Below, in pieces: positions 8,001 through 29,638 of a DNA stretch of 55,360 nt. The stretch's first letter is position 1, and every line of letters starts with the position of its first letter. A program made the position numbers and the translations under genes. This DNA comes from Intoshia linei (taxonomy: Eukaryota; Animalia; Orthonectida), in contig LWCA01000101.1 in assembly GCA_001642005.1 (NCBI GenBank), positions 1-55,360 on the forward strand. Direction: 5' to 3'. The notes beneath the pieces are model-generated. The model saw only the letters and a program-made list of their open reading frames with translations. It had not been told where the DNA came from and did not search any database.

Positions 8001-11000
8001 AAATTACCATTCTTTTTTTTGAAAACACCCCTAGAATTTCAAAACATTTACAGGTGTTAGAGTTGTATCCTGTTAATACGCATGAAAAATTTTAATCCGA
8101 ATAGGTGATGACTTCACGATCAAAAAAGCATTTTAACATTTACATATTTTTTTTCGAAATATTTTATTAAAACAAAAAATGTTAAATAATTAACGGTCCG
8201 AAAATTAAGAAAAAGATTATTCTGATAGAACTTATTCCAGTTGATATAAATACAAAATTTTAACTCCAAAAATCTACGCATTCCTGGTGAAAAATAATTT
8301 TTTATATATTTTCAACCATTATTTTTTTACAAATATTTCGATTAAAATAAAAATTGTCACATTTTTTGAAAACTTTGAGCATTGATTGGCAAATTAGTAC
8401 TAAATGTGTGTATTTTTAAATTATAAAATTATAATTCGTAATCAAAAACATTTAGCACTCTCTATTCGAATTGCGTTTGTCATTTGATAAAAAAATATGA
8501 CATTTATGACTTTTTAAAAATAGATATACCTTATTAAATATGTTTATTAGAGTTGCCTCATACATTTCTAACAATTTTTTATTATTAAAAAAAAAATTAT
8601 TTTTATAACATAATTCCCCTAATAATGACACATTTATGGTTATGGAGTTTACGTTGAAGTCGTGTTATTTTAATTTAATGTATTATGTTAATTATGTTAA
8701 TTTAATGTATTAGGTTAATTATGTTAATATAGTACATGTATGTATTATGTATGTTAATTTGTTTGTGTTTAATTTTGTTTAAGTTTTAGAGATGGTTAAA
8801 ATCCTCTAACAATCTAATAAGTACATATTTTAGTTCGTAATCAACCGTGGTTAAAAACTAAAAAATGAACTATAGTCAAATTTTAAATATATAATAAAAC
8901 AGGGAATTCAACATAATAACCACATAACTATGGATATATTATAATATCTGCTTTTCCACTTGAAATTCAAGTTTTAATTTTTATTTACTGTATTTTGAAT
9001 GTTAATATTTTTATATTAATTGGTTTTTCACTAAAATACACCATATACAGTGTATATTATACACGCTAACCGTCATTGATTCTTTGATGGATGTGACACC
9101 CTTGTATACATATTAAATATAAATAAATTATATAATTAATATCTATTTACATTGTTGTAATAAGTATAAATGTAGATATTATTTATAAAAGTTGATATTA
9201 ACAATAATTCAATATTTTTAGGTATAAATGAGAATAAAGAAACTAAAAATCTTGATGATAATAAAAATATGTATATAAAAGTAATATTTTTGGTTTTGTA
9301 ATGTAATGTGTGTTTATTTGAACTATCTAGTTTTATAATTTTGACATGATTACAAAAATTATTATAACGGAAAGTACTATGTATATCAATTTTTAATTTA
9401 CTATTACATTTATTTTATTTTGTTTGTTTATATAATATTATAAATTTAGAGCCCTGAAATAGCTAACAAAAAACCAAATGACGTGATAGGTTAATATATA
9501 ATAAATGAGTGATTCTTTACTGGAGGTGCATGTTACTTATAGAAGCATAAATTATTTTTGTTAGAAAGAAATTATTAAATTTTTATTAAATGTTTATTAA
9601 ATATTTAGCAAATTATTGCAAATATTTAATCCTAAAGATGAGTTTCTGAAAAGTTTAAAAAAATGAGAATAAAGCATGATTTACTAAACAGTACTACAAT
9701 ATACATAATTAGTTAGGGCATGCACAAACTCTAAATTAAGAACCACTGCATTACAAAAAATTCACTATAAATCTATTACTTATAACTAAAAAAATTACAT
9801 TAGAAAGTATACGTTACAAAATATTATAGTGTTACTAAAATTTAAAATTAATTAATTAATACTTAAAATAATTAAACTAAATTTTAGTCAACAAATTTAC
9901 GACTTCATTGAAGAAAAATTCATCCATGTAATTCATGATTACTTATAAAATATGTAGTAACCCAAAGTTTCCCAATCTGAGCATATGAAATTTTTTGGTG
10001 AATTCTATACATTCAACCATTTTCCATTTATTATTTTAAATTAATAATATACTGGGTTGACTGTGATGTACTACGTACAAACAGTACCTAGCTCTGCCGA
10101 GGGCACATTTTGGGTGAATATTTACATTTTAAATTTTCATTTTAATAAAAATATTTGCAAAATAATGGTTGAAAATATAATAAAAATTATTTTTCACCGG
10201 GAATACGTAGATTTCTAGGGTTGAAACTTTGTATTTATATCAACTGAAATCAGCTCTATCAGAATAATCTTTTTTTAATTTTCAGACAGTTAATTATTTC
10301 ACATTTTATGTTTTAATAAAATATTTCGGAAAAAAATATATGAATGCTAAAATGCTTTTTTGACCGTGAAGGCGTAACTTATTCAAATTGAAATTTTTTG
10401 TGTGTGTTAACAGGATACAACTGTACCACCTGTAATTTTTTAAATTCTAGCAGTGTTTTCATTAAAAAAAGAAGGGTAATTTGAGGTTTTGGCCCTGAAG
10501 ATATAATTGTTTTAAATTTAAATTTATGATAATATTTATGATTTTAAAATCCGTATCAGAGTATATATTTTTTTAAATTTTCTTTTACGTTTGAGTTTCA
10601 AAAAAAAAACAATTGGGTTTTTTAACCCGTACGATATGAGTTTTGGAGGTTGAAATATTTTTTGTTAACACCCTCGGAAAAAACTGTAATTGAAATGTGG
10701 ACTTTATATAATTCTAAGACTGGTAGTTATTGAAATAAACGGTAACACACAGACACAAACAAATATTGCGTAGCATATTATATAAGTAAAGATGGACGTA
10801 ATATTCATAACATGATAATCGTAGTAATTTTCTGATTAATCTGTGAACTTTTGACTTTTTGGACTTATATTTTCCTTTAAACTATAGTTTTAATTGGTTT
10901 GTAATTTGTAAAATTTATTTTTTGGCCCTCACTTGCCATGTGTTTCGACTACCAATTAAAATTAATCAATGTATGTACAATACAATGAAATTTGTGACTA

Positions 11001-14000
11001 GATCAGAAAAACAAGAGATGTTAATGCTAAATTCAAAATATAAAAAACTTAATATCAATGGTAAATACAAATTTATATTAATTAGTTATTAATTTAATAT
11101 GACAATAGAAAATAAAGGATATGATAAAGCTAAAAAGGAAATTGGTTCAGTCAAATCAATGTAACAAATTTTATCAATATTATGATAATAATCTAGAGTT
11201 CAAAGACAACATTCGTTAATTCGAAAAACGAAAAAAACTTTTACCAATCAATTTAATGACTCTGAAGCACAAAATGTATATTTAATATATGAAATAAATA
11301 TATATAATAAAAATTTAACTTGAAACCTGCAACGACATTTACCGTGGTCAAGTTAAAAATAAAAATATTTTAAAGTTGATTGATTGGGTTGAGTATTAAC
11401 TGATTGGTTATATAAAATTGAATACGTTAATATAACTAAAATTTAAGTTAATGACCATTTGTTTATATTCAAGACTTGTCCAAGTTACTTTTTACGGGAG
11501 GATTACAATTTTTTTTAATATTTTCCCGTGCAGGCGTTAATATTAATATATGAATTATATCATTGACAATTTAGAAACTTAAAGAAATCAATCATAATTG
11601 GAAAAATAAATGTAACACGTTTATATGAAATTTTTAATTTAGTACTTTTAGTAAACGTGACAAAGGAAAAGTAATAAATTTAATATACCCTTGGTAACGA
11701 AATTAATATAATTAATTTTTAGTCAAGATTTAAATGAATCTCAAAAAAAAGCGAATAAAGATAAAGTAATTATATTAAATGTTAATGTAATATATATTCA
11801 TAATGAAATAATGTATAAATTAAATTTTTAACAATTATAAAAAAGATTTTATAGTTTTTTCAAAATAAATATGAAGAAGATTGGAAAGAGAGAGGTTTTA
11901 TTTAAATATGACGGTAACCCTCTATTAATCCAGTCAAACTAATCCATTGTGAATATGGCACTAACCCAATTGATAAAATATAATAAAACATTTGAGGGTT
12001 ACCTGAATTATTCATATAGATTTGAAAGTTTTCATAAAAAATAATAGAACAAAAGGCTCGTGAAGCTGAAAAACAAAAATCAGATTTGACAAAATATTTA
12101 AGTAAAGATCGTAGAAAGCTTAGCAGAAAAATTTTGACTGAAAGTTGTGTTATCGTATCTCATGAAGATAGAAATCTTTGGTAATGCATTAATATTATAA
12201 TGTCATGTAATTATTACATTATTATCATTAATATTTAAAAAAATATACTCCAAATTTCCTAACTAATATAACTTCCAGTAAAACACTGCAATTTATCTTT
12301 TAATTATTATAATGATGAAATATTTTCAGACTATGATATAATATTTAAATCTAAAATGATAAAATGTATTACACTGCAGTCTGCAGTGTATCAAAGTAGA
12401 TAAACATTGTATTAAGTTATTATTACATCGCTTGTCGTTATTATTATACTGTATGTGAAATGACATATAATCTAAATTACTCTAAAAATGATTATTGTAT
12501 ATAAACAGTTCGGCCTAATGTTGTTATTTCATATTTGATATCTTCAAGACATTTATATTTATAATCAGAAATTCTTTAGGAAATATAATTCAATTTTATA
12601 TAGTGAAAATGGATGAAACCTAGATATTTTAATTAATAAACAAAAAAATTTGGTTTTATTTGATAAATTGTATTATTATTTCCATGATTTATATTTTTTA
12701 ATTAAAACTAATCTTGTTTTATCAATGAATATTTTTCTTAATTTATTTATAATTTATAAAAATTCTAAAATAAGCTCATAATAATATGTGACCAAATTTC
12801 ATCAATACATTCAATGTTTAGTGCAGTGGCCACCAAACTACGGCCCGCGAATTACAAATCTATTACAAAATACCCCCGTGATATCTTACATTTATCATTG
12901 ACTTACATTTTAAATGTATATATTATCGACTTGTCATTTCTAGATCATGAGAAACTTATTAATTCATTAACTTAAATTTTAAATCGTAATTTAAAATTAC
13001 GTCATGTATATTTTCCATCTACCTTACCGATTTTTTTTTAGTTATTCCGGCACCATGTCAAAAAGGTTTGGTGGTCACTGTTTTACTGTACAGGTTACCT
13101 CACCTTTTTCACTGCGAACCGTTATTTTTCAATAAAATTGTCTCTCATAAAAAAAATAATTGAAAATCCCGGCTATAAGATGGTTTAAATTTTTTAATAT
13201 AAAACCAAAAAAACGATATGCCTTTTTTGAAAAGTGGAAAAAAATTTTTATATAATTTTTTTAATTGCTTCTTTTTTCTCTAATATCGTTTGATTTAATT
13301 CATCTCTATGCATGTCACTGTATTGTCTGGAACGATTGGAATTTGGAGTGAAAAATAGATTTTATCGTATTTTTAATATATTATTTGATATAATAGTAAA
13401 AACGACATTTCTATTCCCAACAATTTTCAAGACATTTTAAATTGGTTTAAAAGGGAAGAAAAAGAAAATTGCTTCGAGGCAAACTCAAATAGACCTTTTC
13501 CTTGGTTTTATGGTAATGTATTGTAATTTTAGTTACTTTAAAATAAAATTTTCTTGATAGTTAATTTTACCTATTAGAGAAGTATTTCGCAAAAGTGTTT
13601 AAATATTGTTGCGCATTAGCTAGTTATAAATTTTAACTATCATTGTTTATAAATATTATGCACATGGTGCATAAAAGTTGAGTATGATTACTGAATAAGT
13701 GTTCACAACGAAATTGTTGATTTTTAAGTAATTTTGGACAATTTTTGAAAAATTTAAATATTTATTGGTATTGATGATTAACTTTAAAAATATTTTAGAA
13801 AATAATTTTGGCATTTCATTTTACAGTAAAATTTTGAAACCAGATCAAACCTTGTATATAGAATATTTTATTCTTAAAAAAATGTTCTAAAAACTTAATA
13901 CAAACTTTTTAGAATTCAAAGATTTTTAGTGGTTTTTTCAAAATTAAGAGTTTTTTTGATAAATAGTTTTTAACCGTGAAATTTTATCCATATCAAAAAA

Positions 14001-17000
14001 ATATTTTATTTTTTCACATCTAAAATTACTTGCATCCAGATGACTAACTCACTATTAATTAGTTCTCTATGTCTTAATTTTATTACTCATTAACTTGTAA
14101 TGGTAACATGTTAATAATAATGGTTAACATTAATATATTTGTGTATAATCACGATACGTAGATTATGGTGATACAAAAAGGGGTACATTTGGGAAAATAC
14201 AAAGATTTATCAATATAAAATATGAATAGCTCTTTAAATATAACACTGTAATAAAAATATTTGTTGATCGCAAAAAACCATCCGACCAGGCGTTTAATAT
14301 ATGTATTAATTTAATCTATTATTACAGTCATGTAATTTAATTAGTAACAAGTTTAATGTATTAGAGTTTAATCTTTGTATTTTGGATATTGAAACACGAA
14401 TATAAGCATTTAACTTGCCAAAGAAAGGCAATAAAGGTATACCCAATGGTGAAACCCTTTTTTATTGATATAACGCAATTAATTTAATTTAATGATTCAA
14501 TAACTCAACCTTGCTGCTTTGGTAAATTTATTATTATATATTGACCAACTTTTAATATAATAGCATAAGCAAACAATGATATTTAATTGTGGTAAATAAT
14601 TATGTAGAGTGCTACCTTTCTTCACGAATTCTTATATCTTTGATTAACTAAAAATTTATAATCATTCCCGCCTGTGTGTAGTGTTAGGTAAATCTATAAA
14701 AAAGATTTCTCCTGTAAATGAAGTAAAACAACATAATTTTGGTTAAAACTCCATAGTTTTCAATCAAAAATGTCTTAAAAGATTATTAATTATTCGGACA
14801 ATTTGTTTTTTCTAAAATATAGAATCTACAGTTTAATTTATTTCAGAATTGACTTTTATGAATTTTTTAACTGATTCGTGTTTACTCCCGATTATAGTAG
14901 CTTCTGTTTCCAAACAAACTATTTATTTTAATATTAATAGTTAATAATTAACTATTAATCTTTCTATTATTATAATCAAATTCATTAAATTTATTATTTT
15001 TTGGGGAATTATAAACTTGCAATCCCATATTTGATGCATAAATAAAAGCCACGAGAAATATGTTATCAGTTTTACATTTAAGCGTTTATAAGCAATGCAT
15101 ACATAATTTATGTATATATAATGTATATTAATGAATATTATGTAAACTAAAATACACTTATAATGATTATTGCCATATAGAATTTTTATCGCAATAAATA
15201 GTTGATTCTGATATCAGAATATTTACCACCAAGAAAACTTGTTATTAATTTCATTATTCACTGAAATTAATAAATTATATTAATATTGACGTGATATTTT
15301 TCTAACTAGTTTTAGAATTTCATCAACCATTACAAATAAGCCATTTATGTAAGTCATTTTTTCTGCATACAATGTAGTCCATACATACATATTTAGTTTA
15401 TTCTTAGTAAATATACATTATTACAAAATTGATTTTTGACTGCTGTCCTACATAAAATTAGAATATTAATGGATTTGATTTTTATATGTCCGCTATATAT
15501 CAAATCAATTTTTGTTAAATTTGCAGTAATAATAAATATATTATTCGATAATCCTAGACCAGGGTTGGGAACATGCGGCCTTATTGACGATTTGGTGCGG
15601 GCTTAACATAAAAATATGTCATATTCATTATTTTTGAATTAATTTACATTTTAAATTGTCAAATTTTAACTATCAATTTAGTAAATAGAAATTTTAAATT
15701 TTATTACACTTTATTATAATGTTTATAAAGTCGAATCTACGATCTCAAATCTCTAACGTGCATTTAGAAAATCAATTAAAATTAATTACTTTTAGTATAG
15801 TACCAAATATAAAAGCTCTTTATTTGAGAAAAACATGTCAAAAAACATTAAAATATATTTAATTTCTTAATAATTTTTAACAACATTTTTATCGACCATT
15901 AAAACTAACCGTATAATCTTTAGTTTCGATGAATTGAATTGATTTTCGTCTCTATCTATATTATTTAACAGCTTAAAAAATTTTGTATTTATGATCAATT
16001 TTTAAAAATTGCAAATAACCTATATATTATATATCTACTAGGTTGACTGTTGTGTACTACGTACAAACAGGACCTAGCTCTACTGAGGGCACATTTTTTT
16101 TATACATAAAAAATAAATTTACGTTGAAAATATATTACTTAAAAATCCTATTATTCACTATTATCAATCCTTTAAAGGAGTGGTTCCCAAATTTGTTTCA
16201 GGTGGAACAATCATATCACATTACTTTTTATTTTAAAGTGAATTATTCCATCTTAATTTTTTGTTTGTTAACATTTGTGTAAAAGAATTTTAAAAACAAA
16301 ATTGTTATGCCATTTTTTTAATATATTAGACAGAATGTGTGTATAATAATTAAAAATAAAGTTAAAACAGTCCAATCCTAAAAATTGTCATAAGTCAATT
16401 ACGACATAAGTCGTCACTTATTCGGATTGAATTTTTTTGTGTTTTAATGGGATACAACTGTAGCACCTGTAAATTTTTTTTAAATTCTAGAGCTGTTTTC
16501 ATTAAAAAAAGAAGGGTAATTTGGGTTTTGGCCCTGAAGATATAATTTTTTTAAATTTAAGTTTATGATGATAAAATCAGTATTAGCGTATACATTTTTT
16601 AAAATTCTCCAACTCGTTTGATTTTCAAAAAAAAGGACAATTGGGGTTTTTGACCCGTAAGATCTGAGTTTGGGAGATTGAAATTTATTTTGCCAACACC
16701 TCCGAGAAAAACTGTAATTGAAATGTGGACTTTATAAAATTATGAGACTGGTAGTTATTTAAATAAACTGGAACACACACACATATAAACAAAAATCGTG
16801 TAGCTTATTATATAAGTAAGCATATGACTATATTTTTTATCTCACGGTGCGGCCTCATCAATGTCAAATTATTGGAATGTGGTCTTATGTATGAAATGGA
16901 ATCCCTGTCCTAGACATGATGATTGAAAATTTTAGAACAATTTTTATCGATAACAATTAAACAATTAAACGAACAATTAAAAAGGTTATTTATCGTTTAC

Positions 17001-20000
17001 CAACTCTGTTAAACTCATATTAAACAAATATATAAGGGTTAAAAAAATAAATTAAAAAATTTTAGATAGTCACTTTTAATTACAACTGCTTCCATAAACA
17101 CGTTTTATAGTAATTTAAATAAATATATTTATAGGAATTTTAACACGTGAAGAAAGCAATAATATATTGTTAAATTCTAAAGATGGAACATATTTGATCA
17201 AATTGTCTTTCAAAATATACGGATACACTTTAGGAATAAAAATGAAAAATGGCATAATAAACTATCTTATAGAAAAGAATTCACAACAATTTTATGTGTT
17301 TTTTGGAAAGCCAAAACCGGAGTTTTCCACATTAAACGAATTGATACAATTCTATAATGTATGATTTTTTATATTTTATTTATTCACAAGTCGACATTAA
17401 TTAATTTATTATTAGCATACAATGTATACTATAAATATATTCATTAATATACTGGGTTGATATAGATCAGGGGTGCGAGACTCAATTTTCTTGGCGGGCC
17501 AAATTTGAATAAAAATTATTACGCGGACACACAAAAAAAATTTTTACTCAATATTTTATGTTAAAACTAATAGTTTTAATTTATTCATTAAATGAAATAA
17601 TAAACAATCATAATAAAATAAGTGTACAAATAATATTAAAATTAAGTAATAAATCATGAATAAATAAATTATGAAAAATATATAAAAAAACTAAAAAAAG
17701 AAATACAGTAAACTCTGTCTATAAGAACACTGTCTGTAAGAACAGTTATGAATATTTTTATAGTTTAGTAAATTTTCTGCATTATTATTAATGTACTAAC
17801 GTTTTCATTATTGACTAAATTAATGTTCGACTCTTTCTATAAGAACAGCTTCTGAATTGTAGGGAGTTTACTTTTTGTGTAAAAAAATGTTATAAAAATA
17901 AAAATTGATATTATAGCGCACATTTCACAATTGGGCCCCACAATATAGACTCTATATCAAGGGTGTACAACCTGTGGATTTTATATTTATGTGAGAGCGT
18001 TTATGTGCGGCCGTGGGCATTAGATCATAATGCAATATATCAATGTACTTCAAATTGAAATGTTTAAATCAGATTTTATTCAAGGGAAATTTAAAATATT
18101 TTAATCAAAAAGTTACATTTTCGACTTTCCCCCAGTTCCTCAAATTGGATTTAAACTTTCAAACTTTCGATGTATTTGGGCCGATTCATGTTTTTCATAC
18201 TATACCAAGATTACATTATTATTTATGTTTATAATTAAAGCATGTTAAAATGTAGGCATCTTATTACAAAATGGCCTGATTTAAATTTTGCTGTTGATTT
18301 ATTGTGCAATGAAATACACCATTTTACATCAAATTAAAAAAGTTTAAATGAGATTTTATTCAAGAGAAATTTAAAATTTTTTTATCAAAAAGTTACATTT
18401 TTGACTTTGATGACTTTCTCAATTTCAAAGTAAACTTTGTGCACCCCTGATCTATATTATAGACCAAATAAAATAAATTCTTAACTACAGGTTAAATGTA
18501 TATTTATCTTGATTTATACAATTATAATACTTTGTGGTGTCTCCTTTAGTAATGATTAGGACTGTAATTCTTTAAAGTATTGTATTTTTAAGAATTTTTG
18601 GTTTTTCGACAATTGTTTAATTTTGAATGAATTCCTCAGTCAAAATTTATTGCATCAATCAATTCAGATTTTAATCTAATTCTAATTTTAATTTGGTGGA
18701 CCTCATCTTTCAATTTCAAAAATACTATTTTCTAAGGCTTTCATATTTGACAAATAATATTTTGACCAGAAATACCCTTATCTGCAAAATAGCATTGGAT
18801 GGATTTATATTTGTGCAAGGAGTTAAATCTTGCTAGAATATATATTTTTCATTTATATTTCATTTAGATATTTCAATTAAAAACAATTCTAAAACAATTC
18901 TTGCAAACTTTTTGGTTCATTCTATTTTCCACAATCTGTATTTTACTAATATTCATAACGGATATAACTACAAACCATAACGTTCCAAGGAAATATGACT
19001 GTTTTTTTGGTACAATCTGATCTAAATGCTTCATTTGACCTTCTTATATTTCCATCATACTTATATATTCGTCAGAAAATATGACAAATAAATCAATTAA
19101 CTGGAATTCTATTAATTAAAATAAAATTAAAAATTAGTGACTATTTGTTTTTTTAATAAAGATTAATTACCTTTCTACAGTCACTTTTAGTTCAATTTTC
19201 GTACTTTTTTGACAATTCAAATATATATTTGTTCATATTTATAGATAAAAGGGGTTTTTTCATTTTTTTGTTAATTTATATCCGGCTTTAAACAATCAAC
19301 GGTTAACAGTAATTCTTGATATATGTATATTTTGTGATTTAAGTTTTATAACTTCTAACTTTTGATTTCAGAAAAACTTGAATTTATGTTTTCTATGCTT
19401 TTTTTACAACTGTTCTAACAGTTTTTTCGGTTGTGGACTTTTTCATACCAAACATTTTTTTGTTCGAATCAAAATATTGCATGATTTGTAATTTTTCTTT
19501 TTATTAACTAAACAATTTATTGAGACACACTAAATAAATCAGCAATTTTTTTTGATTCCAATTTGAATTTTATAAAAAGTTTAGTAAAATTTTTTTATCG
19601 GAAGGAACATCTTGTCTTTTAACCATACTAAATTTAGCAATTTTTAAATTTACATTACATATTATTAATGCTCTGTAAGAATATTTTAAGTCACTTGACT
19701 AATGATGCCTAACCTCGGCGGTAGCGCTTACCTATGCGATTTACTCTTTTTCTACTTTCTTGATAAGTACACTAAAAACTTTATAATTAATTTATTAACA
19801 TTATAAATAAAATTATTCATATTTTGAGTAGAAAAAAATAATGTTTTATGTTATTCTATTTCTACGATCATTCACATGCTTGTTTTTTTCTATGAAAATC
19901 TATAAAAAATATCTTTTCAAATTTAACTGCTAAAAAATAAATTTGTAAAAATTATTTATTAAACACCTTTTCGCATAACCGAACCTACCATATCCATAGA

Positions 20001-20386
20001 CCCTTTTTCGATGTCTATTACATATATGTATTTCATTTAAATAATATTGACAACTGACTAAAATGTGTTTTAAACAAATTTTCTCGTATTCTACATTGTT
20101 GACAATAAACATGCTTTAATATTAAGTTATATCTTTTAACAGGCAGAATATAAATTTAAAAAATAAATTTATTAAGGGTGAGATGTAATTTTTTTTATGA
20201 CGCGATAGACAAAAAAGGTAGGAATCATATCATTTCACCCTAAAAATTTTTCAATCGATTCACATACATGCGAAATATATGTTAATGTTTATTTAGAGAT
20301 CACCTATAACATGGAATGGTATGGAAGTTTTGCAACATGTCCCTATGTGTCAAGAAAAACAAAATATTACCGAACTTGTAACTTGA
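5074..20386 (+). CDS. SH2D4: SH2 domain-containing protein 4 (SH2D4A/B-like), multi-exon
   Basis: The N-terminus MLKTILKNMYVDPELLNDLDEEQMQILFYQIRQ|EQLRRY matches the SH2D4 signature, with an RVxF-like KKINF. Mid exons give EEDWKEREQKAREAEKQK. Exon 13397-13512 gives ILNWFKREE..PWFYG. The SH2 exon is 17135-17358 and the last exon 20297-20386 reads RSPITWNGMEVLQHVPMCQ..ELVT*. Exons between about 5430 and 11500 are only partly resolved. Confidence 0.9.
6106..6610. mobile_element. hAT-type MITE
   Basis: TIRs cagagccgttttaag / cttaagacgactctg; perfect 8-bp TSD catgtatg at 6098-6105 and 6611-6618. Confidence 0.9.
7669..8356 (+). mobile_element. Non-autonomous Helitron, 3'-truncated, duplicated 5' terminus
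   Basis: a^TCCTTACTTATAC at 7669, then a^TCCTAACTTGTATA at 7685; family core follows. Confidence 0.85.
8356..9102. mobile_element. Decayed TAGGGTGTCACA-type hAT MITE
   Basis: Left part matches 670-800. Right end attctttgatggatgtgacaccct is the reverse complement of the 39288 terminus. Confidence 0.55.
10052..10792 (-). mobile_element. Near-complete non-autonomous Helitron
   Basis: On the - strand it reads A^TC...hairpin tgtac-gta-gtaca...CCAG^T, with no TSD. Confidence 0.88.
10795..10867 (-). repeat. Fragment of the left subterminal region of the hAT element at 46846
   Basis: Reverse complement of about 46858-46928 (agtccaaaaagtcaaaa..cacagattaat..gaaaatt). Confidence 0.7.
12824..13080. 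mobile_element. hAT (Buster/Charlie-like) MITE
   Basis: TIRs cagtggccaccaaac / gtttggtggtcactg; degenerate TSD gtttagtg/ttttactg. Confidence 0.75.
15560..16907. mobile_element. hAT MITE carrying a nested Helitron
   Basis: caggg...ccctg ends; perfect TSD tcctagac at 15552-15559 and 16908-16915. Confidence 0.85.
16038..16822 (-). mobile_element. Complete non-autonomous Helitron nested in the hAT MITE
   Basis: 3' CTAG^T with subterminal hairpin; 5' a^TGCTTACTTATA, a TC-to-TG variant of the terminus. Confidence 0.88.
17958..18449. mobile_element. hAT MITE with an internal ~100-bp direct duplication
   Basis: Ends caagggtgtaca / tgtgcacccctg; TSD ctctatat/atctatat; about 18031-18130 is repeated at about 18306-18410. 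Confidence 0.75.
18524..19626 (-). pseudogene. Decayed Tc1-family transposase in the last SH2D4 intron
   Basis: The - strand reads MVKRQDVP..NQKKIADLFSVSQ (HTH), SRITVNR*LFKAG, VIFSDE, RRSNEAFRSDCTKKTV..VMV, YIF*QD and KGDTTKY, with many stops and frameshifts. Confidence 0.85.
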
Positions 20387-21983
20387 GCTTAAATTAAACT
20401 AAATTTATCATATTAATATTATTTCTGTTTTATATATTACATGTAATTGTATTGTTTCCTTTTATTTTATCATGAATTTTATGAAATAAAATTATATCTT
20501 GCAACGTTCTTTAATCCAGGAATATGAAATCGTGTTACGTGGGACAGTAGTGGATCTAGTTGGGGTGCAAGGGGGCAGCCGCCCCCTGGAGTGACAAATA
20601 GGCACTTAAAATATTATAATTTGCATAACATGGGGTAAAATTAAAAAAATTCTATGACATACTAAATTAAATTAAATTACTTTTAATGAATAATTCTTGT
20701 TATCATTGTTTACGTTTTATGTAGATAAATTTGTTATCGGAGTTTAACAGCAGTTTAAGTTAAATTATCCAACAATTGAAAAATAAAAAGATATTTTTCA
20801 ATTAATTGATTTTTTTTCTATAACTGAAAAAATATAAATTGAATTCATTTATTAACGAATGGTTGGATAAAAAATTAATTAAAATTTTTTTATGTAGTTC
20901 AAAAATTAAATTTAATCATTATACACTGTAATTTAAAATAATACAATATTAAGGTGTCAAGTTGACACTGGCAACACTCGTTGTAGCGTATCGCAGTCCC
21001 ACCATGCTTTATTTATTTCCAGAAACAATTTTATCTCCAAATTCGAAGGAAGAAATAAATATTATGAAAATATTTTCTAAATACTAACAACTTTTTATTA
21101 TTCTATGCAATTTTAGGAAAATAGAAACGCGTTTGTCATCAGAAAGATGATTTATTTAACCTACTAGCATTACTGTTATGTACTTCGGACAAACAGCATC
21201 CTAATATATTTATTATTATCACATGACCAGTTTTTTAAAAATTATTATGATATTGTTATCAATATTTAATTAATTGAAATTTTTTTATATTTTAAAAACT
21301 AATTTATTGCAATTATTTCATATAAATCAATTAATTACAATCCCTGATTCTACTTATGGATCTTATTTATTAATAAAAATTTAATAATATTTAATATTTA
21401 GACATAAATATAATACCCACTTTATTTTAATATTTGAAAAAATTTGCATTTTCTCTATTTACATGTTAATTTAAATATTATTTGAATTTAACGTGTAAAA
21501 TTTTACTGTAAATGACTATACTTGATATCATTCTTATATTGATGATTTTATTATTGACATACAAATATTTAAACTGTATTTGAATCGCCAAGTCAAAATC
21601 GAAAAAATCCACATAAAATCACAAATTTCCAATAAGACAAGATAAGAATTTATCAACACCGACAATGATAATACATGTATTGCTTCAATAATTATAATTT
21701 ATTAATAAATATTTAATGTATCTTTAAATATTGACATTAAATACAGAGAAACGCACCCTAAAATGTTGAAGCTAATAATAAATATCATTCATAGTAATAA
21801 TATTAATAACTAATTCTAAGGCATATTGATATTTGTCGTAGACATGTCATGTTATTTTTATTCTGATTTTACAGTTCCAATCCTAGTTCATTAACCCAAA
21901 CCTTCTGAATTTGGAAAAAAATATTATAAATAGCAAACAAAAAGTAGTTAAAATTAAATTCTGAAATTTTATTTTATGTAATA

Positions 21984-24900
21984 ATGCATGTAATTAGTTT
22001 GATAAAATGTGTACATTTAATAAGTATTATCTTGATCGCATCAGCAGAATACAATTCAAATGATGTATGCATAGTTGGTGCCGGATTAGCGGCCTTACAA
22101 ATTGCCCATGGATTTCAACAAAGGGATGTGAATTATATTATATTTGAAAAATCGAATCGTGTGGGAAAATTTTTTGAACATTTCCCTAGGCATAGAAAGT
22201 TAATTTCTCTAAACAAAATATACACTGGACAAAAAAATGATGAATTTAACATGAGACACGATTGGAATTCTATTTACACCACAGATGAAGAATTTAGAAT
22301 TTCAAAGTTTTCTAAAGAATTTTTCCCCATGGCTGATGATTTTCTAGATTACATTAATGATTTTTATCAAAAACATAAATTTAATGTAATTTCACTGTGT
22401 AACTTAAATAATGGATATTTTAAAGGTTCGATTTAATACCCACATTAATAAAGTAAAAAGCAATGGAGATCGTTTCACATTGGTCAAAAAAAATGGACTG
22501 ATTCATGACTGCGGGTAAATATTTACTTATTATTAATTTATATTATAGATCTGTAATCATTGCAACCGGTGTTTCAGAATCAAATAAATTAGACATTGTC
22601 GGCAAAGAAAATATTATCGATTATGCGGATCTTTCCACAGACCCTAAAGATTATATTAACAAAAATGTTTTGATATTGGGTCTAGGAAATTCAGCATTTG
22701 AGGTTTAATTTTCAAGTATAAATAATAATATTTAGACGGCTGATTCCATTTATAGTCACACGGCCAGTGTTAGGTTTCTAACTTTAATTTCTGATAATAT
22801 CTTATTTATAGAATGGTTGGAAATACCAGAATACGTTTGTCTTGGGAAACCCATTATGTTGGTGATTTAAGGTACTTTTTAAATATTTTTTTATCATTAT
22901 TCTGTATTTTGTTTAAAAATTTTGCATATAAGGTGATTATCAATTAAATCATACATGTATATGGATCCTGGTTGTCTATTGTAGGACTATATATTGGTCG
23001 TCGACCAGTGATGTATATTCAGAACCTATAAAATATGTTTTTATTTTAAAGTCATGGTATATAGGGCAATATCTGTTCATTAAGATTAAGAAATTAGACA
23101 TATTTTTCCCATCTGCATCTAGATCCAACCGTATAGGAAAATACCATAAGTTTACCGGTGCCAGTACTAGTTATATTTGGCAAAAATTGTTATATATCTT
23201 AGTTTTAACATTACGGATCCTAAAGTTTTTCAAAAAAAACACTTTATTTTTTTAATATTTTTTTTATTTGTACATTTTACATTTGTTTTTTTACATTATC
23301 CTTCATTTAACGAAATATTTTTTCATGAGCGTTTCTATGAATTTATTGCGTTTGGTTAATTTAACATAAAATATAAAATATATAATATATATTATTATTA
23401 TTATTATATATTAAATATTAAAATATATTTTAGAATTAAAATAATCCTAACTTATATAATATGATACGCGATTTTTATGTGTGTGTGTTACGCTTTATTG
23501 AAATAACTACCAGTCTTAGAATTTTTTAAAGACCATATTTCAATTACAGTTTTTTCCGAGACGTATAATAACATAATTTTCAACCTCCCAAATTCACATC
23601 TTACGGGTCCAAAACCTCAATGGTCCTGTTTTTTTAAAATCAAACGAGTTGGATAATTTAAAAAAATATATACGCTGATGACGCGGATTTTAAAATTATA
23701 AACATTATCATAAATTATATCATCAAGGCCAAAATTACAAATTACAGATAAATTTTTTAATGAAAACATTCCTAGAATTTAAAAAAATGTACAGGTTGTA
23801 CAGTTGTATCATGTTAACACACACAGAAAATTTCAATCCGAATAAGTGACGACTTCACGGTCAAACAAGCATTTTAGTATGCATATTTTTTTTACATTTA
23901 TTAGCTTTATTATACGCTTATTATATAAATCATTTTTAGTATGCATGTTATATAAACAAATAATGTGAAATAATTAACTCTCCAAAAAAATTAAAAAAAT
24001 ACATTATTCTGATAGAGCTTATTCCAATTGATATAAATACAAAAGTTCAACCAGAGAAATCTACACATTCCCAATAAAAAATAATTTTTAATATATTATT
24101 AACCAATATTTTTCAAATATTTCAATTAAAATAGAAATTGAAAATGTAAATATTGATCCAACAATTTCAAAAAAAATGTGCATTGAACGTCTACACATTT
24201 CCAATAAAAAAATATGGGTGAAAATCTATATAATTCATTCCTTTGGAATTTGAAAATGGTGTCCGCAACACAAATAGACATTATTTTAAAAATAAATACA
24301 CTAATTATATTGATATTTCATCAATACACTAAACCTGCACTAGACGGCAGATAAATTCCATTTTTTCCAAAAAATATTACACCCTAATGCAGGGATCGGC
24401 AACGAGTGGCCACAGAATAGTTTTGGTGACTCTTTGAGATTTTTAGATAATCATTTTAAAACTGAATTTTCAGATAGTCCTTGAATTTATTTATTTGAAT
24501 ATACTAGAACCGTTTATATTAAGTAAAAATTGAAAATTAGAATGTGTAAATTTTCAAAAACAGGGCCGGTATAATTTTTTGGTATAAAAAAGTGGCCCAC
24601 GAGATTCAAAAGTTTGTCTACCCCTGCCCTAATTTATATCATATATAAATACTCTTAATAATTAATTAATACATTAATGTATTAATTAATCTTAAATAAT
24701 TTGTAAAAATTAATTATAAATAATTAGAGGCATAAATAATTCCCCATTGGATACTTATATGCTGAAGAGTTTGGATACTGTTAACGAGCTACCATTAAAA
24801 AATATGTCAATAGTAAAAAGATCAGATGGTCGACTAGATGTTGATGTTTGGATGCCAGTAATTGACGAAAATCGCAATTCATATCATGCAGAGAAACAGG

Positions 24901-26938
24901 ATTCATTTTTCTTCAGAGAACCGTTCGACTTTGTTTTGAATTGCATTGGCTTTCATTTTGATGAATCCATTTTGGAAGAGTTATTGATATGTGTCTAAAT
25001 AATATTTAAATTTAGAAAATTACAGCCAACTCGATCTGGATGTCATGGAAAATACCCCAGTATGAAAGAAAATTATGAATCCAATATTGTTCCAAATCTA
25101 TTTTATGCAGGAACGATAGGACATGCTCTTGATCACAGAAAAGCGGCGGGTGCTTTCATTCATGGATTTAGATATACAGGTATTTATAATGATGTGTGAT
25201 TGTTTACTTACGAAATTAAGATGAACATTAATCTATGTTATTTATTCACATACATGTTATTATTATCTTAACACATATTCAATATATAAAATGGAAATGA
25301 TACCTAATCGTGTTCCGCGAAATAATAGACGTACAATGTAATTATAATGGTTTCTATGAATACCTTAAATAGGTTTAATAGGTCGCGAGATAAAAACGTT
25401 GAAGAGCACTTTTGTATGTTATGTGTGTAAGATTTTTAAAGAAATAACGTTTATATATTAGAATATTATGTAAACTCAAAAAAAATACATTTATTAAAAC
25501 ATTAAGATATTTATTATATATGTAATTATATATATAATAATAATTAATTTTATATTTATTAGCCAAGGCTTTGTCGCACATAGTTGAAAAGCGAATATAT
25601 AATCGCAAATGGCCATCTCGCATATATCCAATTTCAGAATTATTAAACACGGTGATAAAAAGAGTAAGTGAGTCATCAGCTCTATATCAAATGTATGGAA
25701 TTTACGGAGATATATATGCAATTAGAGAGTAAACTTTAAAATATTAATTTTATAATTATTACGTTATATTGATTGAATCAATGTGGTACTATCGCGAAAT
25801 ATTTAGGTCGCAGATACATATTTTCCGATGAGTTATATAATACAACTTATATGCATATGCATGACTCCAACTCGGGTTACGGGTTTTTCAAAATTAAAAA
25901 ATGAACCGATTAAGTTGAATTTCTTCTAAAATGTGGTATCAAAAACATTTTGTACGATAAAGTACAAAATTCGTAAAAAAATAGTGAATTCTTAATCGAT
26001 CTGAACAATTTGGACTATTCTAAAAGTTAAGATTTACTGCTTAGCAGTTATTTCTAACGGACCCTTTTTAAAATGATTTATAGGTCATGTTTAGCAAACT
26101 TTAATTGTGTTTTAGCGTTAATTTTTTAAAAGAATAATTTTAATAGAAAATCGCGAATCGATATTTTAATAAATAATGAATAATGCTAGGATATTATTGC
26201 AATTAATTGTTTATTACATTACTATTTTTTTAATATTAATATTAATGTCAATTTCTGTCTTTCATATTTATATTCTATTGTTTTGCTTCAATAATGATTA
26301 TTATATTAATTTTTACAATTAATATAAAAAGGAAATTATCATACAGTTTATGAATTTATAATTATTATGTAGAGTTTATGAATTCTTTAATTATAATATA
26401 ATAGTAATGGAGAAACCTTTGAACATGTAAAAGAATTTCCATTATGCAATTTGGCAAATTTTGAAGAATCAACTGGAATACATTTAGATAAATTCTATGC
26501 TACTTTCATGCAACTAGGAAAGAATTTCTCTGGTATCGGTTTAGATACATTTTACTATAAAAGAATCATTGATGATTTACAAGATTCTCATCGTGTTAAT
26601 TTTATACATCCAGCCATTTACTATTATGAAAAAGTTCCAACGGGTATTTTAATTTAAAATGCACAATCAAAATTATTTATCAGGTGAAATGAAAAATAAA
26701 TACCATTCTAGCTATTGTTTGTGCAAACCAAAAATGGCTCATTTCATTACTGGTGATGCTATTACAATTTGGGACGCTCCGATAGCACACCATTTACTTA
26801 CCCGCAAATTTTTCCAAGAAACATTAAAAATGGATTTAAGGCATTATACCGATGAAAATTGCTACAAACTATTACTAAAACATGGATCATTACCTATTAC
26901 ATGTCGTCAACACTATTTGTCTAATAAAGGGATAGGAG
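21984..26938 (+). CDS. FOXRED2: FAD-dependent oxidoreductase domain-containing protein 2 (ERFAD), 10 exons, 606 codons; probably continues into the downstream TXNDC16-like exons
   Basis: Signal peptide, GAGLAALQ Rossmann motif, FPRHRKLISLNK, FNMRHDWNS, GLGNSAFE, LSWETHYVGDLRGINN..LDTYMLKSLD, FIHGFRYT and CRQHYL. Exons 21984-22385, 22426-22514, 22549-22702, 22736-22773, 22812-22871, 24728-24979, 25016-25179, 25563-25728, 26405-26643 and 26684-26938 are all phase-consistent. Confidence 0.95.
23445..24251 (+). mobile_element. Non-autonomous Helitron, 3'-truncated, in a FOXRED2 intron
   Basis: a^TCCTAACTTATATAATATG 5' end, (TG)n and family core; reverse-complement match to 3365-4144. Confidence 0.85.
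24390..24626. mobile_element. hAT MITE
   Basis: caggg...cccctg ends; TSD ccctaatg/ccctaatt. Confidence 0.75.
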
Positions 26939-27004
26939 GTTTTAAATTTTACATATACATAATGTATAATCAGTGTTACTCAACTAAATATATTATATAT
27001 ATAT

Positions 27005-27098
27005 CAGTGGTTCTTAAACTTTAAATATGACGGAACCCCTATTTTAATTGTTGTCGTTCATAAGGGGATCGCAAGGTATAAAAGGTTGAGAACCATTG
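27005..27098. mobile_element. 94-bp hAT MITE in the FOXRED2/TXNDC16 junction intron
   Basis: TIRs cagtggttcttaa / ttgagaaccattg. Confidence 0.7.
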
Positions 27099-27418
27099 AG
27101 TTATATGATCCACAAAAATTACTCGTAATTTACGAGTCGTAAACAATAAGAAATTTCTTGTTTAAACATTTTTAAAAAATTATAAAGTGTTTATAAGTTT
27201 TCATAAATTTTAACTTATATAAAAGGCTACGCGATTTTTGTTTGTGTGTCTGTGTGTGTGACTTTATTGAAATAAAATTTTAAAATTTTAAATTACGTGA
27301 AAAATAGGTTTTTCTAATAAAAAAAGTGGACACTTTAGTGTAGAATGTACATTAATTATATATATATATATATTAATTACATGTACATGTCTTTGATAAT
27401 GGAGTATAACTAATTTAG

Positions 27419-29638
27419 ATGCATTTAAAATGAATCCGAAAATGTATTTTAAAGAATCAGGTAATTAATTAATATTAAATCATTTGATGAAACAATTTAT
27501 ATTTAACTCTGCAATTGAAATTTCAGTCATTCTGGTAAATTTTTCGAAAATGATATGAAAATTATCTTTTACACCAATAATAAATTTCTATATTCAATTT
27601 CAAACGAAAAATAAAATTGGAATTTTTTTGAAATTTGGTTAACAGTTTATTCCTTTGTAGTTTTTTGTAAGTGTTGTTTATAAATTATAATATATACAAT
27701 GTATATTATATATATTATACATATTATATAAATAATTATTTATTACAATATTATAATAGTATGGTATTAACATCAATTTAATTTGTTTTAATCATATATA
27801 TAGATAGAATTGAAGAACGACAGGATGATCCAGTGGAACGTTTAGCTTATTCTTTAGATGTTGACGTCAAAAAATTTGCGATATGTAATAAAGCCTTAGG
27901 AAAAATGTTGATGCATCACAAAAATGTCATTGTTTTGTTCACATTATATTGTAAGTATTTGAAATGAAATATTATACTGTTATTTACAATGTTAATAAAA
28001 ATGTAATAATTAAAATGTACTAATAATTGTATAAAGATAAAAATAATTTAATAATGAGTTATATTTTGTAGGGGAACCTAGATCCAAAATTGCTGTTTAT
28101 CATTATAATCAAATGAAGAATCATTATAAAGGTAATAATTTTAAACTTTAAGTAATATATAAATAATATCATGTATAATAATAAAATATATTAATATTTT
28201 AAAATTAGACAGATTTGTTGTTGTTGATTGTTTTGATTGGATCAGAGTTTGTGAAAAATACAACATCTACACTTATCCAAGTGTTGTTATTATTGACAAA
28301 AGCAAAGTCATAGATATTATGCAAAATTCTATCAATGTGGATTCATTAGAAGAATATAGCAAAATGTAACTTTTAAAAATATATATTTATAATATAAATA
28401 GGATTCAAATGGATGCACATCCACAAGTCAAAAATAAGGATGCATGTAAAGAGGTAATTCAAAAAAAATTATTATCACCGCTTCAAATCAAGTATCTTAA
28501 TCTTAATTATAATACCTGTGCAATATTGGTAAAATTCACTTGAAATTGAAATAGATTTTTAAATTAGATTTTCAACGTGAATTTATTTATTTTTTTGGTA
28601 GAATAAAAATGTGCCATCGGCAGATCTATGTGCTGTTTGTACGTACTACATAACAGTCAACCTAGTTTATTTATACACTTCATTTGTTATACATTATATA
28701 TATGTATTATGAAAATATAAAAAAATACGTGTTTGAAATCTAAAGTTTAAGTTAAACTTATTTGTTAAATTAATTATCTGTTAATATTTGAATATAAATA
28801 TAATAAACAGTAATATTATAATATATTGTATTAATGTTAGATAAATTGTTCACACAGTTTACGAAATTGTCATAATCAGGCACAAGGGCAATTCACCATC
28901 TCTAGCAAAATGGATGACATCTCATCAATAATATCTTTAACCGAATCTTCTATAATGTAATTATTTTTTTAATTCATCTAAATTTTGAAATTTTATTTCC
29001 GTTAATCATTTCTACGTCAAGATTGTTACGTTTCATTAAAATAACAATATATTGTTATAAATTTATTATATATTTTACATATTTTATTTCGTGTCTTCAC
29101 TTTAGAAAACAAAATATTGAAAAGCCAATAAGCTTTGTTAAAACTGCTCAGGACGTACTATATTATAATAATTATATATATAAAAATAAGTTTTATTTTT
29201 ATATATTTAAATAGATAACAATATGTCAATATGACAGTTCAAAGTATGGATCAATTCAAAATTGGCTTCACGAATGCGCAAGCGGTATAAATTTTTTAAT
29301 TAAAATGATTCATTTCAATTTCATATTATGTTTAAATTATGAGTCATAATATAAATTTTGTCTAAATTAAATGTATAAATATAGGAAACATAATGACGGA
29401 GTATCCTATTCCAAAATTTACAGGATACGATTATATACAATTTTATGAAAGTGATTACGAAAGTGAAAAATTCTACACAAAAGACGATTATGATTACTTT
29501 AACAAATTTGGTTTTCCACCTTCATTTGATTATATCGATTCTTACAAAGAAGCTGCTAAAAAGTATAAAAAACAAATGAATTCAGATTCGGACGATCACA
29601 ACAAAAACATGAAAAATAAAATTAAAATGGAACTTTGA
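27419..29638 (+). CDS. TXNDC16: TXNDC16/ERp90-like non-catalytic thioredoxin-fold region, 9 exons, ~315 aa, ending KMEL
   Basis: Exons 27419-27460, 27804-27950, 28072-28131, 28209-28365, 28402-28453, 28841-28956, 29106-29154, 29215-29284 and 29385-29638 are phase-consistent. QDDPV, VLFTLYWEPRS, VDCFDWIRVCEKYNIYTYPSV and NWLHECASG..PIPKFTGYDYI resemble recalled TXNDC16 segments (QDDEV, VLFYAGW, INCADWSDVC..FP, WLKKLEAG..PPLPAYDFL). There is no CxxC active site. Confidence 0.78.
28550..28665 (+). mobile_element. Helitron 3' fragment
   Basis: gctgtttgtacgtactacataacagtcaacCTAG^T; colinear with about 50290-50409. Confidence 0.85.

What the first reader, a model, noticed from the sequence alone, without database searches (positions are those of the whole stretch)
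21984..29638. Putative FOXRED2(ERFAD)-TXNDC16(ERp90) fusion gene: an ER flavoprotein joined to its known partner
Seen: FOXRED2 homology stops at CRQHYLSNKGIG, exactly at a phase-1 donor (g|GTTTTA, 26938/26939) of a type also used at other introns in this window. A phase-1 acceptor at 27418/27419 starts nine phase-consistent exons. Joined, 19 exons give 2766 nt, an uninterrupted ORF of about 921 aa. The FOXRED2 half has a signal peptide but no ER-retrieval motif. The thioredoxin half has no signal peptide but ends in KMEL. Without splicing, FOXRED2 would end in AT-rich sequence with its stop inside a MITE (27005-27098). Established: mammalian FOXRED2/ERFAD ends in KEEL, and ERp90/TXNDC16 is a separate gene whose product co-precipitates with ERFAD in ER-associated degradation. 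Inference: this is a Rosetta-stone fusion that hard-wires the pair in a reduced genome. I do not know of a description of it, but I cannot search the literature.
Basis: partly seen in the sequence, partly recalled or inferred. Interest (0 to 1): 0.9.

Follow-up and report, generated by a model that had tools for sequence, protein, structure and literature searches.

The report
Possible FOXRED2–thioredoxin-like fusion gene, unproven
In the tiny genome of the parasite Intoshia linei, an ER flavoprotein gene (FOXRED2/ERFAD) can be spliced in frame onto a downstream PDI-type thioredoxin-like block that has an ER-retrieval-like end but no signal peptide of its own, so a fused protein is the likeliest reading, but no transcript data could be reached and the claimed TXNDC16 identity of the tail could not be tested.

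Summary
Nineteen GT-AG exons (21984-29638, + strand) join into one 2766-nt frame with a single terminal stop.

- Exons E1-E10 are a complete, collinear FOXRED2/ERFAD orthologue.
- The downstream nine exons encode a PDI-type thioredoxin-like domain. It has the CX6C structural pair, no CXXC, and the end KMEL.

For a fusion:
- D2 starts at an acceptor and has no usable start codon.
- No start exon with a signal peptide that fits D2 exists in the 865 nt upstream.
- A [KRH]xEL end occurs once in 1682 open segments of the window.
- About 290 of the 480 nt in the E10-D1 gap are transposon copies.

Against:
- No other FOXRED2 with a thioredoxin domain was seen.
- Linker exon D1 is intron-like in composition. 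If its donor is not used, an in-frame stop gives a canonical-length 16-residue FOXRED2 tail. D1 also holds an ATG usable by a separate gene.
- RNA data were unavailable.
- TXNDC16 orthology was untestable, and two of its features are not met.

Fusion about 0.55; TXNDC16-derived about 0.3. Earlier notes of this scan list other unproven in-frame fusions in this genome.

The parts
21984..22385 (+). E1: start codon, signal-peptide-like N-terminus, FAD-binding GxGxxG (VGAGLAAL)
   Evidence: PF13738 E 9e-8; aligns to residues 9-137 of Lingula FOXRED2
22426..22871 (+). E2-E5 (22426-22514, 22549-22702, 22736-22773, 22812-22871), separated by 33-40 nt introns; E3 holds the second dinucleotide motif (LGLGNSAFE)
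24728..25179 (+). E6 (24728-24979) and E7 (25016-25179), separated by a 36-nt intron
25563..25728 (+). E8
26405..26643 (+). E9
26684..26938 (+). E10: FOXRED2 C-terminal domain, ending ...CRQHYLSNKGIG at a phase-1 donor GTTTTA
   Evidence: (70 hits, FOXRED2 family)
26939..27418 (+). Proposed 480-nt intron, or intergenic gap. It holds the read-through stop at 27022-24. Repeat copies lie at 27000-27209 and 27173-27289.
27419..27460 (+). D1: 42-nt linker exon (phase 1 to 1), the weakest part of the model. It also holds an ATG at 27430. If its donor GTAATT is not used, an in-frame TAA follows at 27466-68.
27804..28365 (+). D2-D4 (27804-27950, 28072-28131, 28209-28365): one thioredoxin-like domain. 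W-EPRS replaces WCxxC. It has a CX6C pair (C-FDWIRV-C) and a YPS cis-Pro loop.
   Evidence: PF00085 E 9e-4, below cut-off; ERdj5 4e-7, TXNDC5 5e-5
28402..29284 (+). D5, D7, D8, D9 (28402-28453, 28841-28956, 29106-29154, 29215-29284): cysteine-containing region of unknown fold, possibly a second degenerate Trx-like domain
   Evidence: no family hit
28602..28664 (+). It has a strong acceptor and G+C 0.38, and would add C-A-V-C. The frame is kept with or without it.
   Evidence: read
29385..29638 (+). D10: acidic/aromatic tail ending KMEL, then the stop. AATAAA lies about 46 nt downstream.
   Evidence: read

Best explanation
One gene of Intoshia linei most likely encodes a secretory-pathway fusion protein. 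Its order is signal peptide, complete FOXRED2/ERFAD flavoprotein (FAD and NADPH motifs), a linker of about 25 residues, a redox-inactive PDI-type thioredoxin-like domain (CX6C structural pair, no CXXC), a cysteine-containing region, an acidic tail and KMEL.

Inferred working:
- The FOXRED2 signal peptide brings the whole chain into the ER.
- The KMEL end supplies KDEL-receptor retrieval, which invertebrate FOXRED2 proteins lack on their own.
- The Trx-like module has no active-site cysteines, so it acts as a client-binding or adaptor part rather than as an electron acceptor.

Inferred origin: the donor at the end of E10, or the one two codons before the stop of a former tail exon D1, came to be spliced to the second exon of a downstream PDI-family gene, whose own signal-peptide exon was then lost.

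Shown: the frame, the two homologies, and the absence of an own start or signal peptide. Inferred: that the splice is used, the localisation, and the function.
For: - Frame: 19 GT-AG exons give one 921-codon frame.
- FOXRED2 half: E1-E10 are collinear with FOXRED2 of Lingula (9-603 of 619), Capitella and Nematostella, and are family members.
- Trx half: D4 matches ER PDI-family domains with the same CX6C pair, namely ERdj5 at 4e-7 and TXNDC5 at 5e-5. That pair is a structural disulfide of ER PDIs (PMC3040216).
- D2 is an internal exon. Its frame opens only 7 codons before its acceptor, and 34 stop-free codons precede its first Met, against a background stop frequency of 0.078 per codon.
- The only start exons that fit D2 in phase encode MNPKMYFKES or shorter, with no hydrophobic stretch.
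- A [KRH]xEL end occurs once in 1682 open segments of the window, and it is this one. Among the 21 Trx loci of the genome, only this one and a PDI ending KEEL have such an end.
- GTT-type donors are used at three homology-verified junctions of the same gene.
- About 290 of the 480 nt between E10 and D1 are transposon copies, so the original gap was about 190 nt or less.
- Nematostella FOXRED2 has a phase-1 intron 5 codons upstream of this position and a separate 21-residue tail exon.
Against: - No transcript evidence.
- No FOXRED2 with a thioredoxin domain appeared among the best 120 homologues or the 70 hits to E10.
- Invertebrate FOXRED2 proteins normally have no KDEL-like end and stop 16-18 residues after the position of the E10 end. 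D1 read to its own TAA gives exactly such a 16-residue tail.
- D1 has intron-level G+C (0.24).
- D1 contains an ATG (27430) that could start a separate gene.
- The phase match alone has about a 1 in 3 chance.
- First-stage readers proposed several other in-frame fusions in this compact genome, and none is proven.
Confidence: 0.55

Rival explanations
1. Two separate adjacent genes. FOXRED2 ends by read-through of the E10 'donor', giving a 28-residue tail with its stop at 27022-24. The thioredoxin-like gene has its own promoter in the roughly 400-nt gap and starts at ATG 27430 in D1 (MNPKMYFKES...), giving a 311-residue protein without a signal peptide.
For: - An ATG in good context lies in D1, in frame with D2 through the strong donor GTAATT.
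- D1 has UTR/intron-like G+C.
- No fusion of this kind is seen in other species.
- FOXRED2 tails are variable and lack KDEL in invertebrates.
- The phase match can be chance.
Against: - The product would be a PDI-type domain with the ER structural CX6C pair, 8 cysteines and a KMEL end, but no way into the ER.
- The FOXRED2 tail would be 28 hydrophobic residues partly encoded by a transposon copy, against 16-18 residues in other invertebrates.
- After removing transposon copies, only about 190 nt or less remain for a poly(A) site plus a promoter.
Confidence: 0.25
2. FOXRED2 uses D1 as its terminal exon and stops at TAA 27466-68 (...GIGDAFKMNPKMYFKESGN). The D1 donor is used rarely or never. The downstream block is then either made only as a minor alternative fusion isoform or is a relic that has lost its first exon.
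For: - The 16-residue tail matches the 16-18 residues that follow this position in Lingula, Capitella and Nematostella FOXRED2.
- Nematostella has a separate small tail exon after a phase-1 intron close to this site.
- The stop lies two codons past the D1 donor.
- A similar 'use or ignore one donor' layout was noted in another gene of this genome.
Against: - Nine downstream exons keep 300 codons open with consistent GT-AG boundaries and exon-like G+C, in a genome where stops occur at 0.078 per codon. This argues for an expressed, selected coding sequence.
- Without the D1 or E10 donor that sequence has no start.
Confidence: 0.15

Closest known systems
[quoted passage not shown]
   Same: The upstream ten exons are a full-length orthologue. 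They carry a signal peptide, a GxGxxG FAD motif, a second dinucleotide motif, the GFIHGFRYT block and the C-terminal domain ending C..HYL.G.G(L/I). Identity to invertebrate FOXRED2 is 30-73% exon by exon.
   Different: All 120 best homologues are 570-830 residues long and have no thioredoxin domain. Vertebrate proteins end K[ED]EL, while invertebrate ones end 16-18 residues after the core with no retrieval motif. Here about 315 further residues may be attached.
TXNDC16 / ERp90 (PDI-family partner of ERFAD; PMC3040216)
   Same: It is an ER PDI-family protein without any CXXC. It has a CX6C structural pair after beta3 in a Trx-like domain. Non-human orthologues end in a KDEL-like motif. It binds ERFAD directly.
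   Different: ERp90 has five Trx-like domains in about 800 residues, whereas this tail has about 315 residues and room for one clear domain plus at most one degenerate one. The conserved N-glycosylation site in the alpha3-beta4 loop of Trx3 is absent (the sequence is N-I-Y). Sequence orthology could not be tested. The CX6C pair is equally found in ERp57, ERdj5 and TXNDC5.
ERdj5 (DNAJC10) and TXNDC5 thioredoxin domains
   Same: They are the best solved-structure matches to exon D4, with the same VDC-x6-C...YP(S/T) pattern. ERdj5 is also a reported ERFAD interactor.
   Different: Both have active CXXC sites. Intoshia has a separate ERdj5 gene with DnaJ plus four Trx domains on contig C2302, so the tail is not the ERdj5 orthologue.
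Flavoenzyme-thioredoxin fusions (QSOX; NTRC; thioredoxin-glutathione reductase). Analogy from general knowledge, not tested here.
   Same: A flavin-dependent redox enzyme is joined in one chain to a thioredoxin-fold module it works with. QSOX does this in the secretory pathway.
   Different: In those enzymes the thioredoxin-fold module carries redox-active cysteines and shuttles electrons. Here the CXXC is missing, so a redox relay through it is unlikely.

Membership tests
FOXRED2/ERFAD | Full-length collinear homology to FOXRED2 orthologues | tested here: met
   E1-E10 map in order to residues 9-603 of 619 (Lingula), 28-608 of 625 (Capitella) and 14-613 of 631 (Nematostella). E10 alone finds the family.
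FOXRED2/ERFAD | FAD and NADPH dinucleotide-binding motifs | tested here: met
   PF13738 and PF13450 hit E1. VGAGLAAL in E1 and LGLGNSAFE in E3 were read.
FOXRED2/ERFAD | N-terminal ER signal peptide | tested here: inconclusive
   A hydrophobic stretch followed by A-S-A|E was read. No signal-peptide predictor was available.
FOXRED2/ERFAD | C-terminal KDEL-like motif | tested here: not met
   It is absent at the end of the FOXRED2 part. It is also absent from all invertebrate orthologues inspected and is present only in tetrapods, so it does not define the family.
PDI family / thioredoxin-like domain | Thioredoxin fold signature | tested here: inconclusive
   PF00085 on exon D4 alone gives E 9e-4 and 19.7 bits, below the 23.5 cut-off, and 16.9 bits in the genome scan. 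PDB matches to ERdj5 and TXNDC5 Trx domains are significant. The whole domain (D2+D3+D4 joined) was not searched.
PDI family / thioredoxin-like domain | CX6C structural cysteine pair after beta3 and a cis-Pro loop | tested here: met
   VVVDC-FDWIRV-C-EKYNIYTYPS in D4 aligns with the same pattern in ERdj5 and TXNDC5.
PDI family / thioredoxin-like domain | CXXC active site (catalytic a-type domain) | tested here: not met
   The position reads LYW-EPRS across D2/D3, so the domain is redox-inactive.
TXNDC16/ERp90 | Sequence orthology (reciprocal best match to TXNDC16) | not testable with these tools
   No TXNDC16 sequence could be fetched.
TXNDC16/ERp90 | Five Trx-like domains | tested here: not met
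   The tail has about 315 residues with one recognisable Trx-like domain. PF13848 gives no hit here.
TXNDC16/ERp90 | No CXXC, a CX6C in a Trx domain, and a KDEL-like end in orthologues | tested here: met
   None of these features is unique to TXNDC16.
TXNDC16/ERp90 | Conserved N-glycosylation site in the alpha3-beta4 loop of Trx3 | tested here: not met
   The loop reads K-Y-N-I-Y-T-Y-P, with no N-x-S/T sequon at that place (feature from PMC3040216).
Expressed gene fusion | Junction-spanning transcripts | not testable with these tools
Expressed gene fusion | Same architecture in another species | tested here: not met
   None among the 120 best FOXRED2 homologues or the 70 hits to E10. Long C-terminal extensions of fragments are not Trx-like. 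No orthonectid relative was in the libraries.

The most novel reading that the evidence does not exclude
The fusion is expressed and its tail is a shrunken TXNDC16/ERp90. This would be a natural Rosetta-stone fusion showing that ERFAD and ERp90 act as one unit. It would suggest that in invertebrates, whose FOXRED2 lacks any retrieval motif, the flavoprotein is kept in the ER through its KDEL-bearing PDI partner.
Probability: 0.2. Interest if true: 0.6.

Novelty: new variant of a known kind. Interest (0 to 1): 0.4.

Why it matters
ERFAD/FOXRED2 is an ER flavoprotein whose enzymatic reaction in ER-associated degradation is still uncharacterised (PMC12833800). Its links to PDI-family proteins rest on co-precipitation in human cells (PMC3040216).

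A natural covalent fusion to a PDI-type module in a streamlined animal genome would be independent, evolutionary evidence that the flavoprotein works physically coupled to a thioredoxin-fold partner. It would also point to retention by the partner's KDEL-like end as the reason invertebrate FOXRED2 proteins lack their own motif.

As it stands this is a gene model without transcript support, and the partner's identity is open. Its present value is as a cheap, well-defined test: one RT-PCR, or mapping of existing reads.

Tried and rejected
All searches were exon by exon by reference. The whole Trx domain (D2+D3+D4), the region D5-D10 and the full fusion therefore remain unsearched and unfolded.
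- Exhaustive HMMER search with E10: it found only ordinary FOXRED2 proteins and fragments. The top hit P0001 is a repeat-protein artefact. Fragments with long C-terminal extensions are junk or low complexity, not Trx-like.
- Word-index search with the Amphiura FOXRED2: the best 120 have no Trx domain. The Intoshia model itself did not rank high enough to be shown.
- Profile attempt: I tried to build a profile from P0040 plus Intoshia exons to pull out the annotated Intoshia protein (alignment A1). The fragments misaligned and column occupancy was too low, so I abandoned it.
- ESM Atlas on D4: only generic short thioredoxin clusters.
- PDB searches with D2 and D10: nothing.
- Synteny: the downstream neighbour of FOXRED2 in Lingula and Nematostella is a second FOXRED2 copy, not a Trx gene.
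- Search for a stand-alone TXNDC16 through PF00085 and PF13848: the weak multi-Trx locus on C972 is ERp44-like and C2302 is ERdj5. No candidate was identified, but divergent domains could be missed.
- Alternative terminal exons after E10: none gives a KDEL-like end.
- Signal-peptide-like start exons: MKQFIFNSAIEISVIL (27487-27534) is in phase 0 and cannot join D2. Two hydrophobic phase-1 candidates lie inside FOXRED2 intron 8 and would need a nested promoter and skipping of E9-E10, so I judged them chance.
Full report
**Setting.** The window is contig C3064 of a 41.6-Mb assembly. Earlier notes of this scan name the genome as the orthonectid Intoshia linei. It is very AT-rich, about 24% G+C. 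Most introns are 33-40 nt, and a minority are enlarged by repeats.

**Observation.**
Ten exons E1-E10 (21984-26938) and nine exons D1-D5 and D7-D10 (27419-29638) all have GT-AG borders. They add up to 2766 nt and give one frame of 921 codons with a single stop at the end.
- E10 ends ...CRQHYLSNKGIG at a phase-1 donor GTTTTA (26938/26939). D1 starts at a phase-1 acceptor (27418/27419).
- GTT-type donors are also used after E3, E4 and E6. At those junctions the exon-by-exon alignment to FOXRED2 orthologues is contiguous.

**Upstream half.**
- E1 carries Pyr_redox_3 and NAD_binding_8 signatures.
- E10 alone retrieves the FOXRED2 family from 1.8 billion representatives.
- A full-length relative found that way (Amphiura FOXRED2, P0040) has thousands of homologues named FOXRED2.
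- The ten exons map in order onto residues 9-603 of 619 in Lingula, 28-608 of 625 in Capitella and 14-613 of 631 in Nematostella. This is a complete FOXRED2/ERFAD orthologue.
- The N-terminus (MHVISLIKCVHLISIILIASA|EY) looks like a signal peptide. This was read directly, with no predictor.

**Where FOXRED2 normally ends.**
- The conserved core of the family ends at C..HYL.GQGL, which corresponds to CRQHYLSNKGI here.
- Only tetrapod proteins continue with a long tail ending K[ED]EL. The echinoderm, hemichordate, lancelet, mollusc, annelid, brachiopod, nemertean and cnidarian proteins inspected end 16-18 residues after the core, with no retrieval motif. A sponge relative was independently noted to lack KEEL (PMC12833800).
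- So 'the FOXRED2 half has no ER-retrieval motif' is the invertebrate norm, not a sign of a missing piece.
- Nematostella has a phase-1 intron in the first G codon of GQSL, followed by a separate 21-residue terminal exon. That is the same phase as the Intoshia donor and 5 codons upstream of it. Lingula has no intron there.

**Downstream half.**
- Exon D4 hits Pfam Thioredoxin below the cut-off (E 9e-4). It matches the Trx domains of ERdj5 (4e-7) and TXNDC5 (5e-5) in the PDB through the pattern VDC-x6-C...YP(S/T).
- According to the ERp90 paper, this CX6C pair is a structural disulfide of ERp57a, yeast Pdi1p a, all ERdj5 Trx-like domains and ERp90 Trx3.
- The active-site position reads LYW-EPRS across D2/D3, so there is no CXXC.
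- The remainder (D5-D10) has six further cysteines and an acidic/aromatic tail, and ends KMEL. No family matched it.
- An end of the type [KRH]xEL occurs once among 1682 open segments of at least 20 codons in the window, and it is this one. Among the 21 thioredoxin loci of the genome, only this one and a PDI ending KEEL carry such an end.
- I conclude that the block is an ER-luminal PDI-family module (about 85% by my estimate).

**Does the block have its own start?**
- D2 begins at an acceptor. Its frame opens only 7 codons before that acceptor, and 34 stop-free codons precede its first methionine, in a sequence where stops occur at 0.078 per codon. D2 therefore needs an upstream exon ending in phase 1.
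- In the 865 nt between E10 and D2, the only start exons in that phase are MNPKMYFKES and MYFKES, both in D1, plus a trivial MYNQ. None is hydrophobic.
- The one signal-peptide-like mini-ORF (27487-27534) is in phase 0 and cannot be joined to D2.
- Two hydrophobic phase-1 candidates inside FOXRED2 intron 8 would need a nested promoter and skipping of E9-E10.
- Hence the only way found to deliver this ER-type module to the ER is through the FOXRED2 signal peptide. This is the main argument for the fusion.

**The gap.**
- 27000-27209 is a repeat with another copy on C1265.
- 27173-27289 belongs to a very abundant repeat, with more than 1000 first-look candidates.
- Without these copies, about 190 nt or less separate E10 from D1. 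That is comfortable for an intron and tight for a poly(A) site plus a promoter.

**Weak points.**
1. No RNA evidence. Other agents of this scan also report no transcript data for this species.
2. No FOXRED2 with a Trx domain was found elsewhere, and no orthonectid relative was present in the libraries.
3. D1 is the weakest exon.
   - It is 42 nt, phase 1 to 1, so it is optional for the frame.
   - Its G+C is 0.24, at intron level, while the other exons are 0.27-0.47.
   - If its donor is not used, the frame stops two codons later. FOXRED2 then gets a 16-residue tail, the same length as in other invertebrates.
   - It also offers an ATG for a separate, signal-less gene.
4. A phase match between neighbouring genes has about a 1 in 3 chance. 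Several other in-frame 'fusions' have been proposed in this compact genome without proof.

**TXNDC16 identity.**
- I could not bring any TXNDC16 sequence into the session, so orthology is untested.
- In favour: no CXXC, a CX6C pair, a KDEL-like end as in non-human ERp90 orthologues, and the known ERFAD-ERp90 complex.
- Against: room for at most two Trx-like domains instead of five; no sequon at the conserved glycosylation site of Trx3; and the shared features also fit ERp57, ERdj5 or TXNDC5, with ERdj5 being a reported ERFAD interactor too.
- Intoshia has separate ERdj5 (C2302) and ERp44-like (C972) genes, so the tail is neither of those.
- TXNDC16 exists in at least one spiralian annotation, Aplysia (PMC8195618).
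- I put 'TXNDC16-derived' at about 0.3.

All searches were exon by exon by reference. The whole-domain search, the fold of the tail and a fusion-versus-complex comparison were therefore not done.

**Verdict.**
- The sequence facts are right.
- A fused signal peptide-FOXRED2-Trx-like-KMEL protein is the best single explanation, at about 0.55.
- The alternatives are two adjacent genes (0.25) and a FOXRED2 that stops after D1 with the tail made rarely or not at all (0.15).
- Literature searches found no description of such a fusion.
- If real, it is a new domain combination of two known families. Interest is moderate until one junction read or RT-PCR settles it.

Noticed in passing
window:28602-28664 (alt. 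28602-28642 with acceptor at 28858): An open piece in the 387-nt D5-D7 intron has the best polypyrimidine acceptor of the gene and exon-like G+C (0.38 against 0.21 for the intron). Either variant keeps the frame and would add a C-A-V-C (CXXC) motif to the tail.
   Followed up: partly
window:27460-27468: The D1 donor G|GTAATTAA contains an in-frame TAA two codons downstream. Using or ignoring this one donor therefore switches between a short canonical-length FOXRED2 tail and the long Trx-like extension. A similar layout was noted by another agent for the domino gene of this genome.
   Followed up: partly
window:27173-27289 and about 23460-23510: A very abundant short repeat (more than 1000 first-look candidates in the genome), containing a GT-rich core, sits in both the E10-D1 gap and intron 5. 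27000-27209 is a second repeat with inverted ends and a copy at C1265:7647-7856.
   Followed up: partly
G000:C2302:7220-10637; G000:C972:7000-12100 (L026); G000:C504:8097-8300 (L012): PDI repertoire of Intoshia: an ERdj5 orthologue (DnaJ plus four Trx domains), an ERp44-like gene, and a PDI whose last exon ends KEEL. The KEEL end shows that KDEL-type retrieval signals are in use in this genome.
   Followed up: partly
L024 (Lingula) 10001-28372; L025 (Nematostella) 10001-33184: FOXRED2 is tandemly duplicated, head to tail, in both Lingula anatina and Nematostella vectensis.
   Followed up: no
(protein set P0071-P0188): A KDEL-like end of FOXRED2 (KEEL/KDEL/KREL) is confined to tetrapods in this sample. 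The lamprey, fish-like and all invertebrate sequences inspected lack it. This raises the question of how the invertebrate enzyme is kept in the ER, or whether it is secreted.
   Followed up: partly
window:42133-44988 (-): A 951-codon open frame encodes a Sec24-type COPII subunit (zinc finger, trunk, beta-sandwich, helical and gelsolin domains), almost free of introns in an otherwise intron-rich window.
   Followed up: partly
window:47488-48138 (+): An open frame of 216 codons has a weak DUF659 match (E 1e-4, below the cut-off). It is possibly a relic of a hAT-type transposase.
   Followed up: no
P0001: The top 'hit' of the exhaustive protein search (2736 residues, 142.9 bits, no aligned stretch) is a perfect tandem-repeat protein unrelated to FOXRED2. 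It is a scoring artefact worth knowing about when reading that tool's first row.
   Followed up: yes
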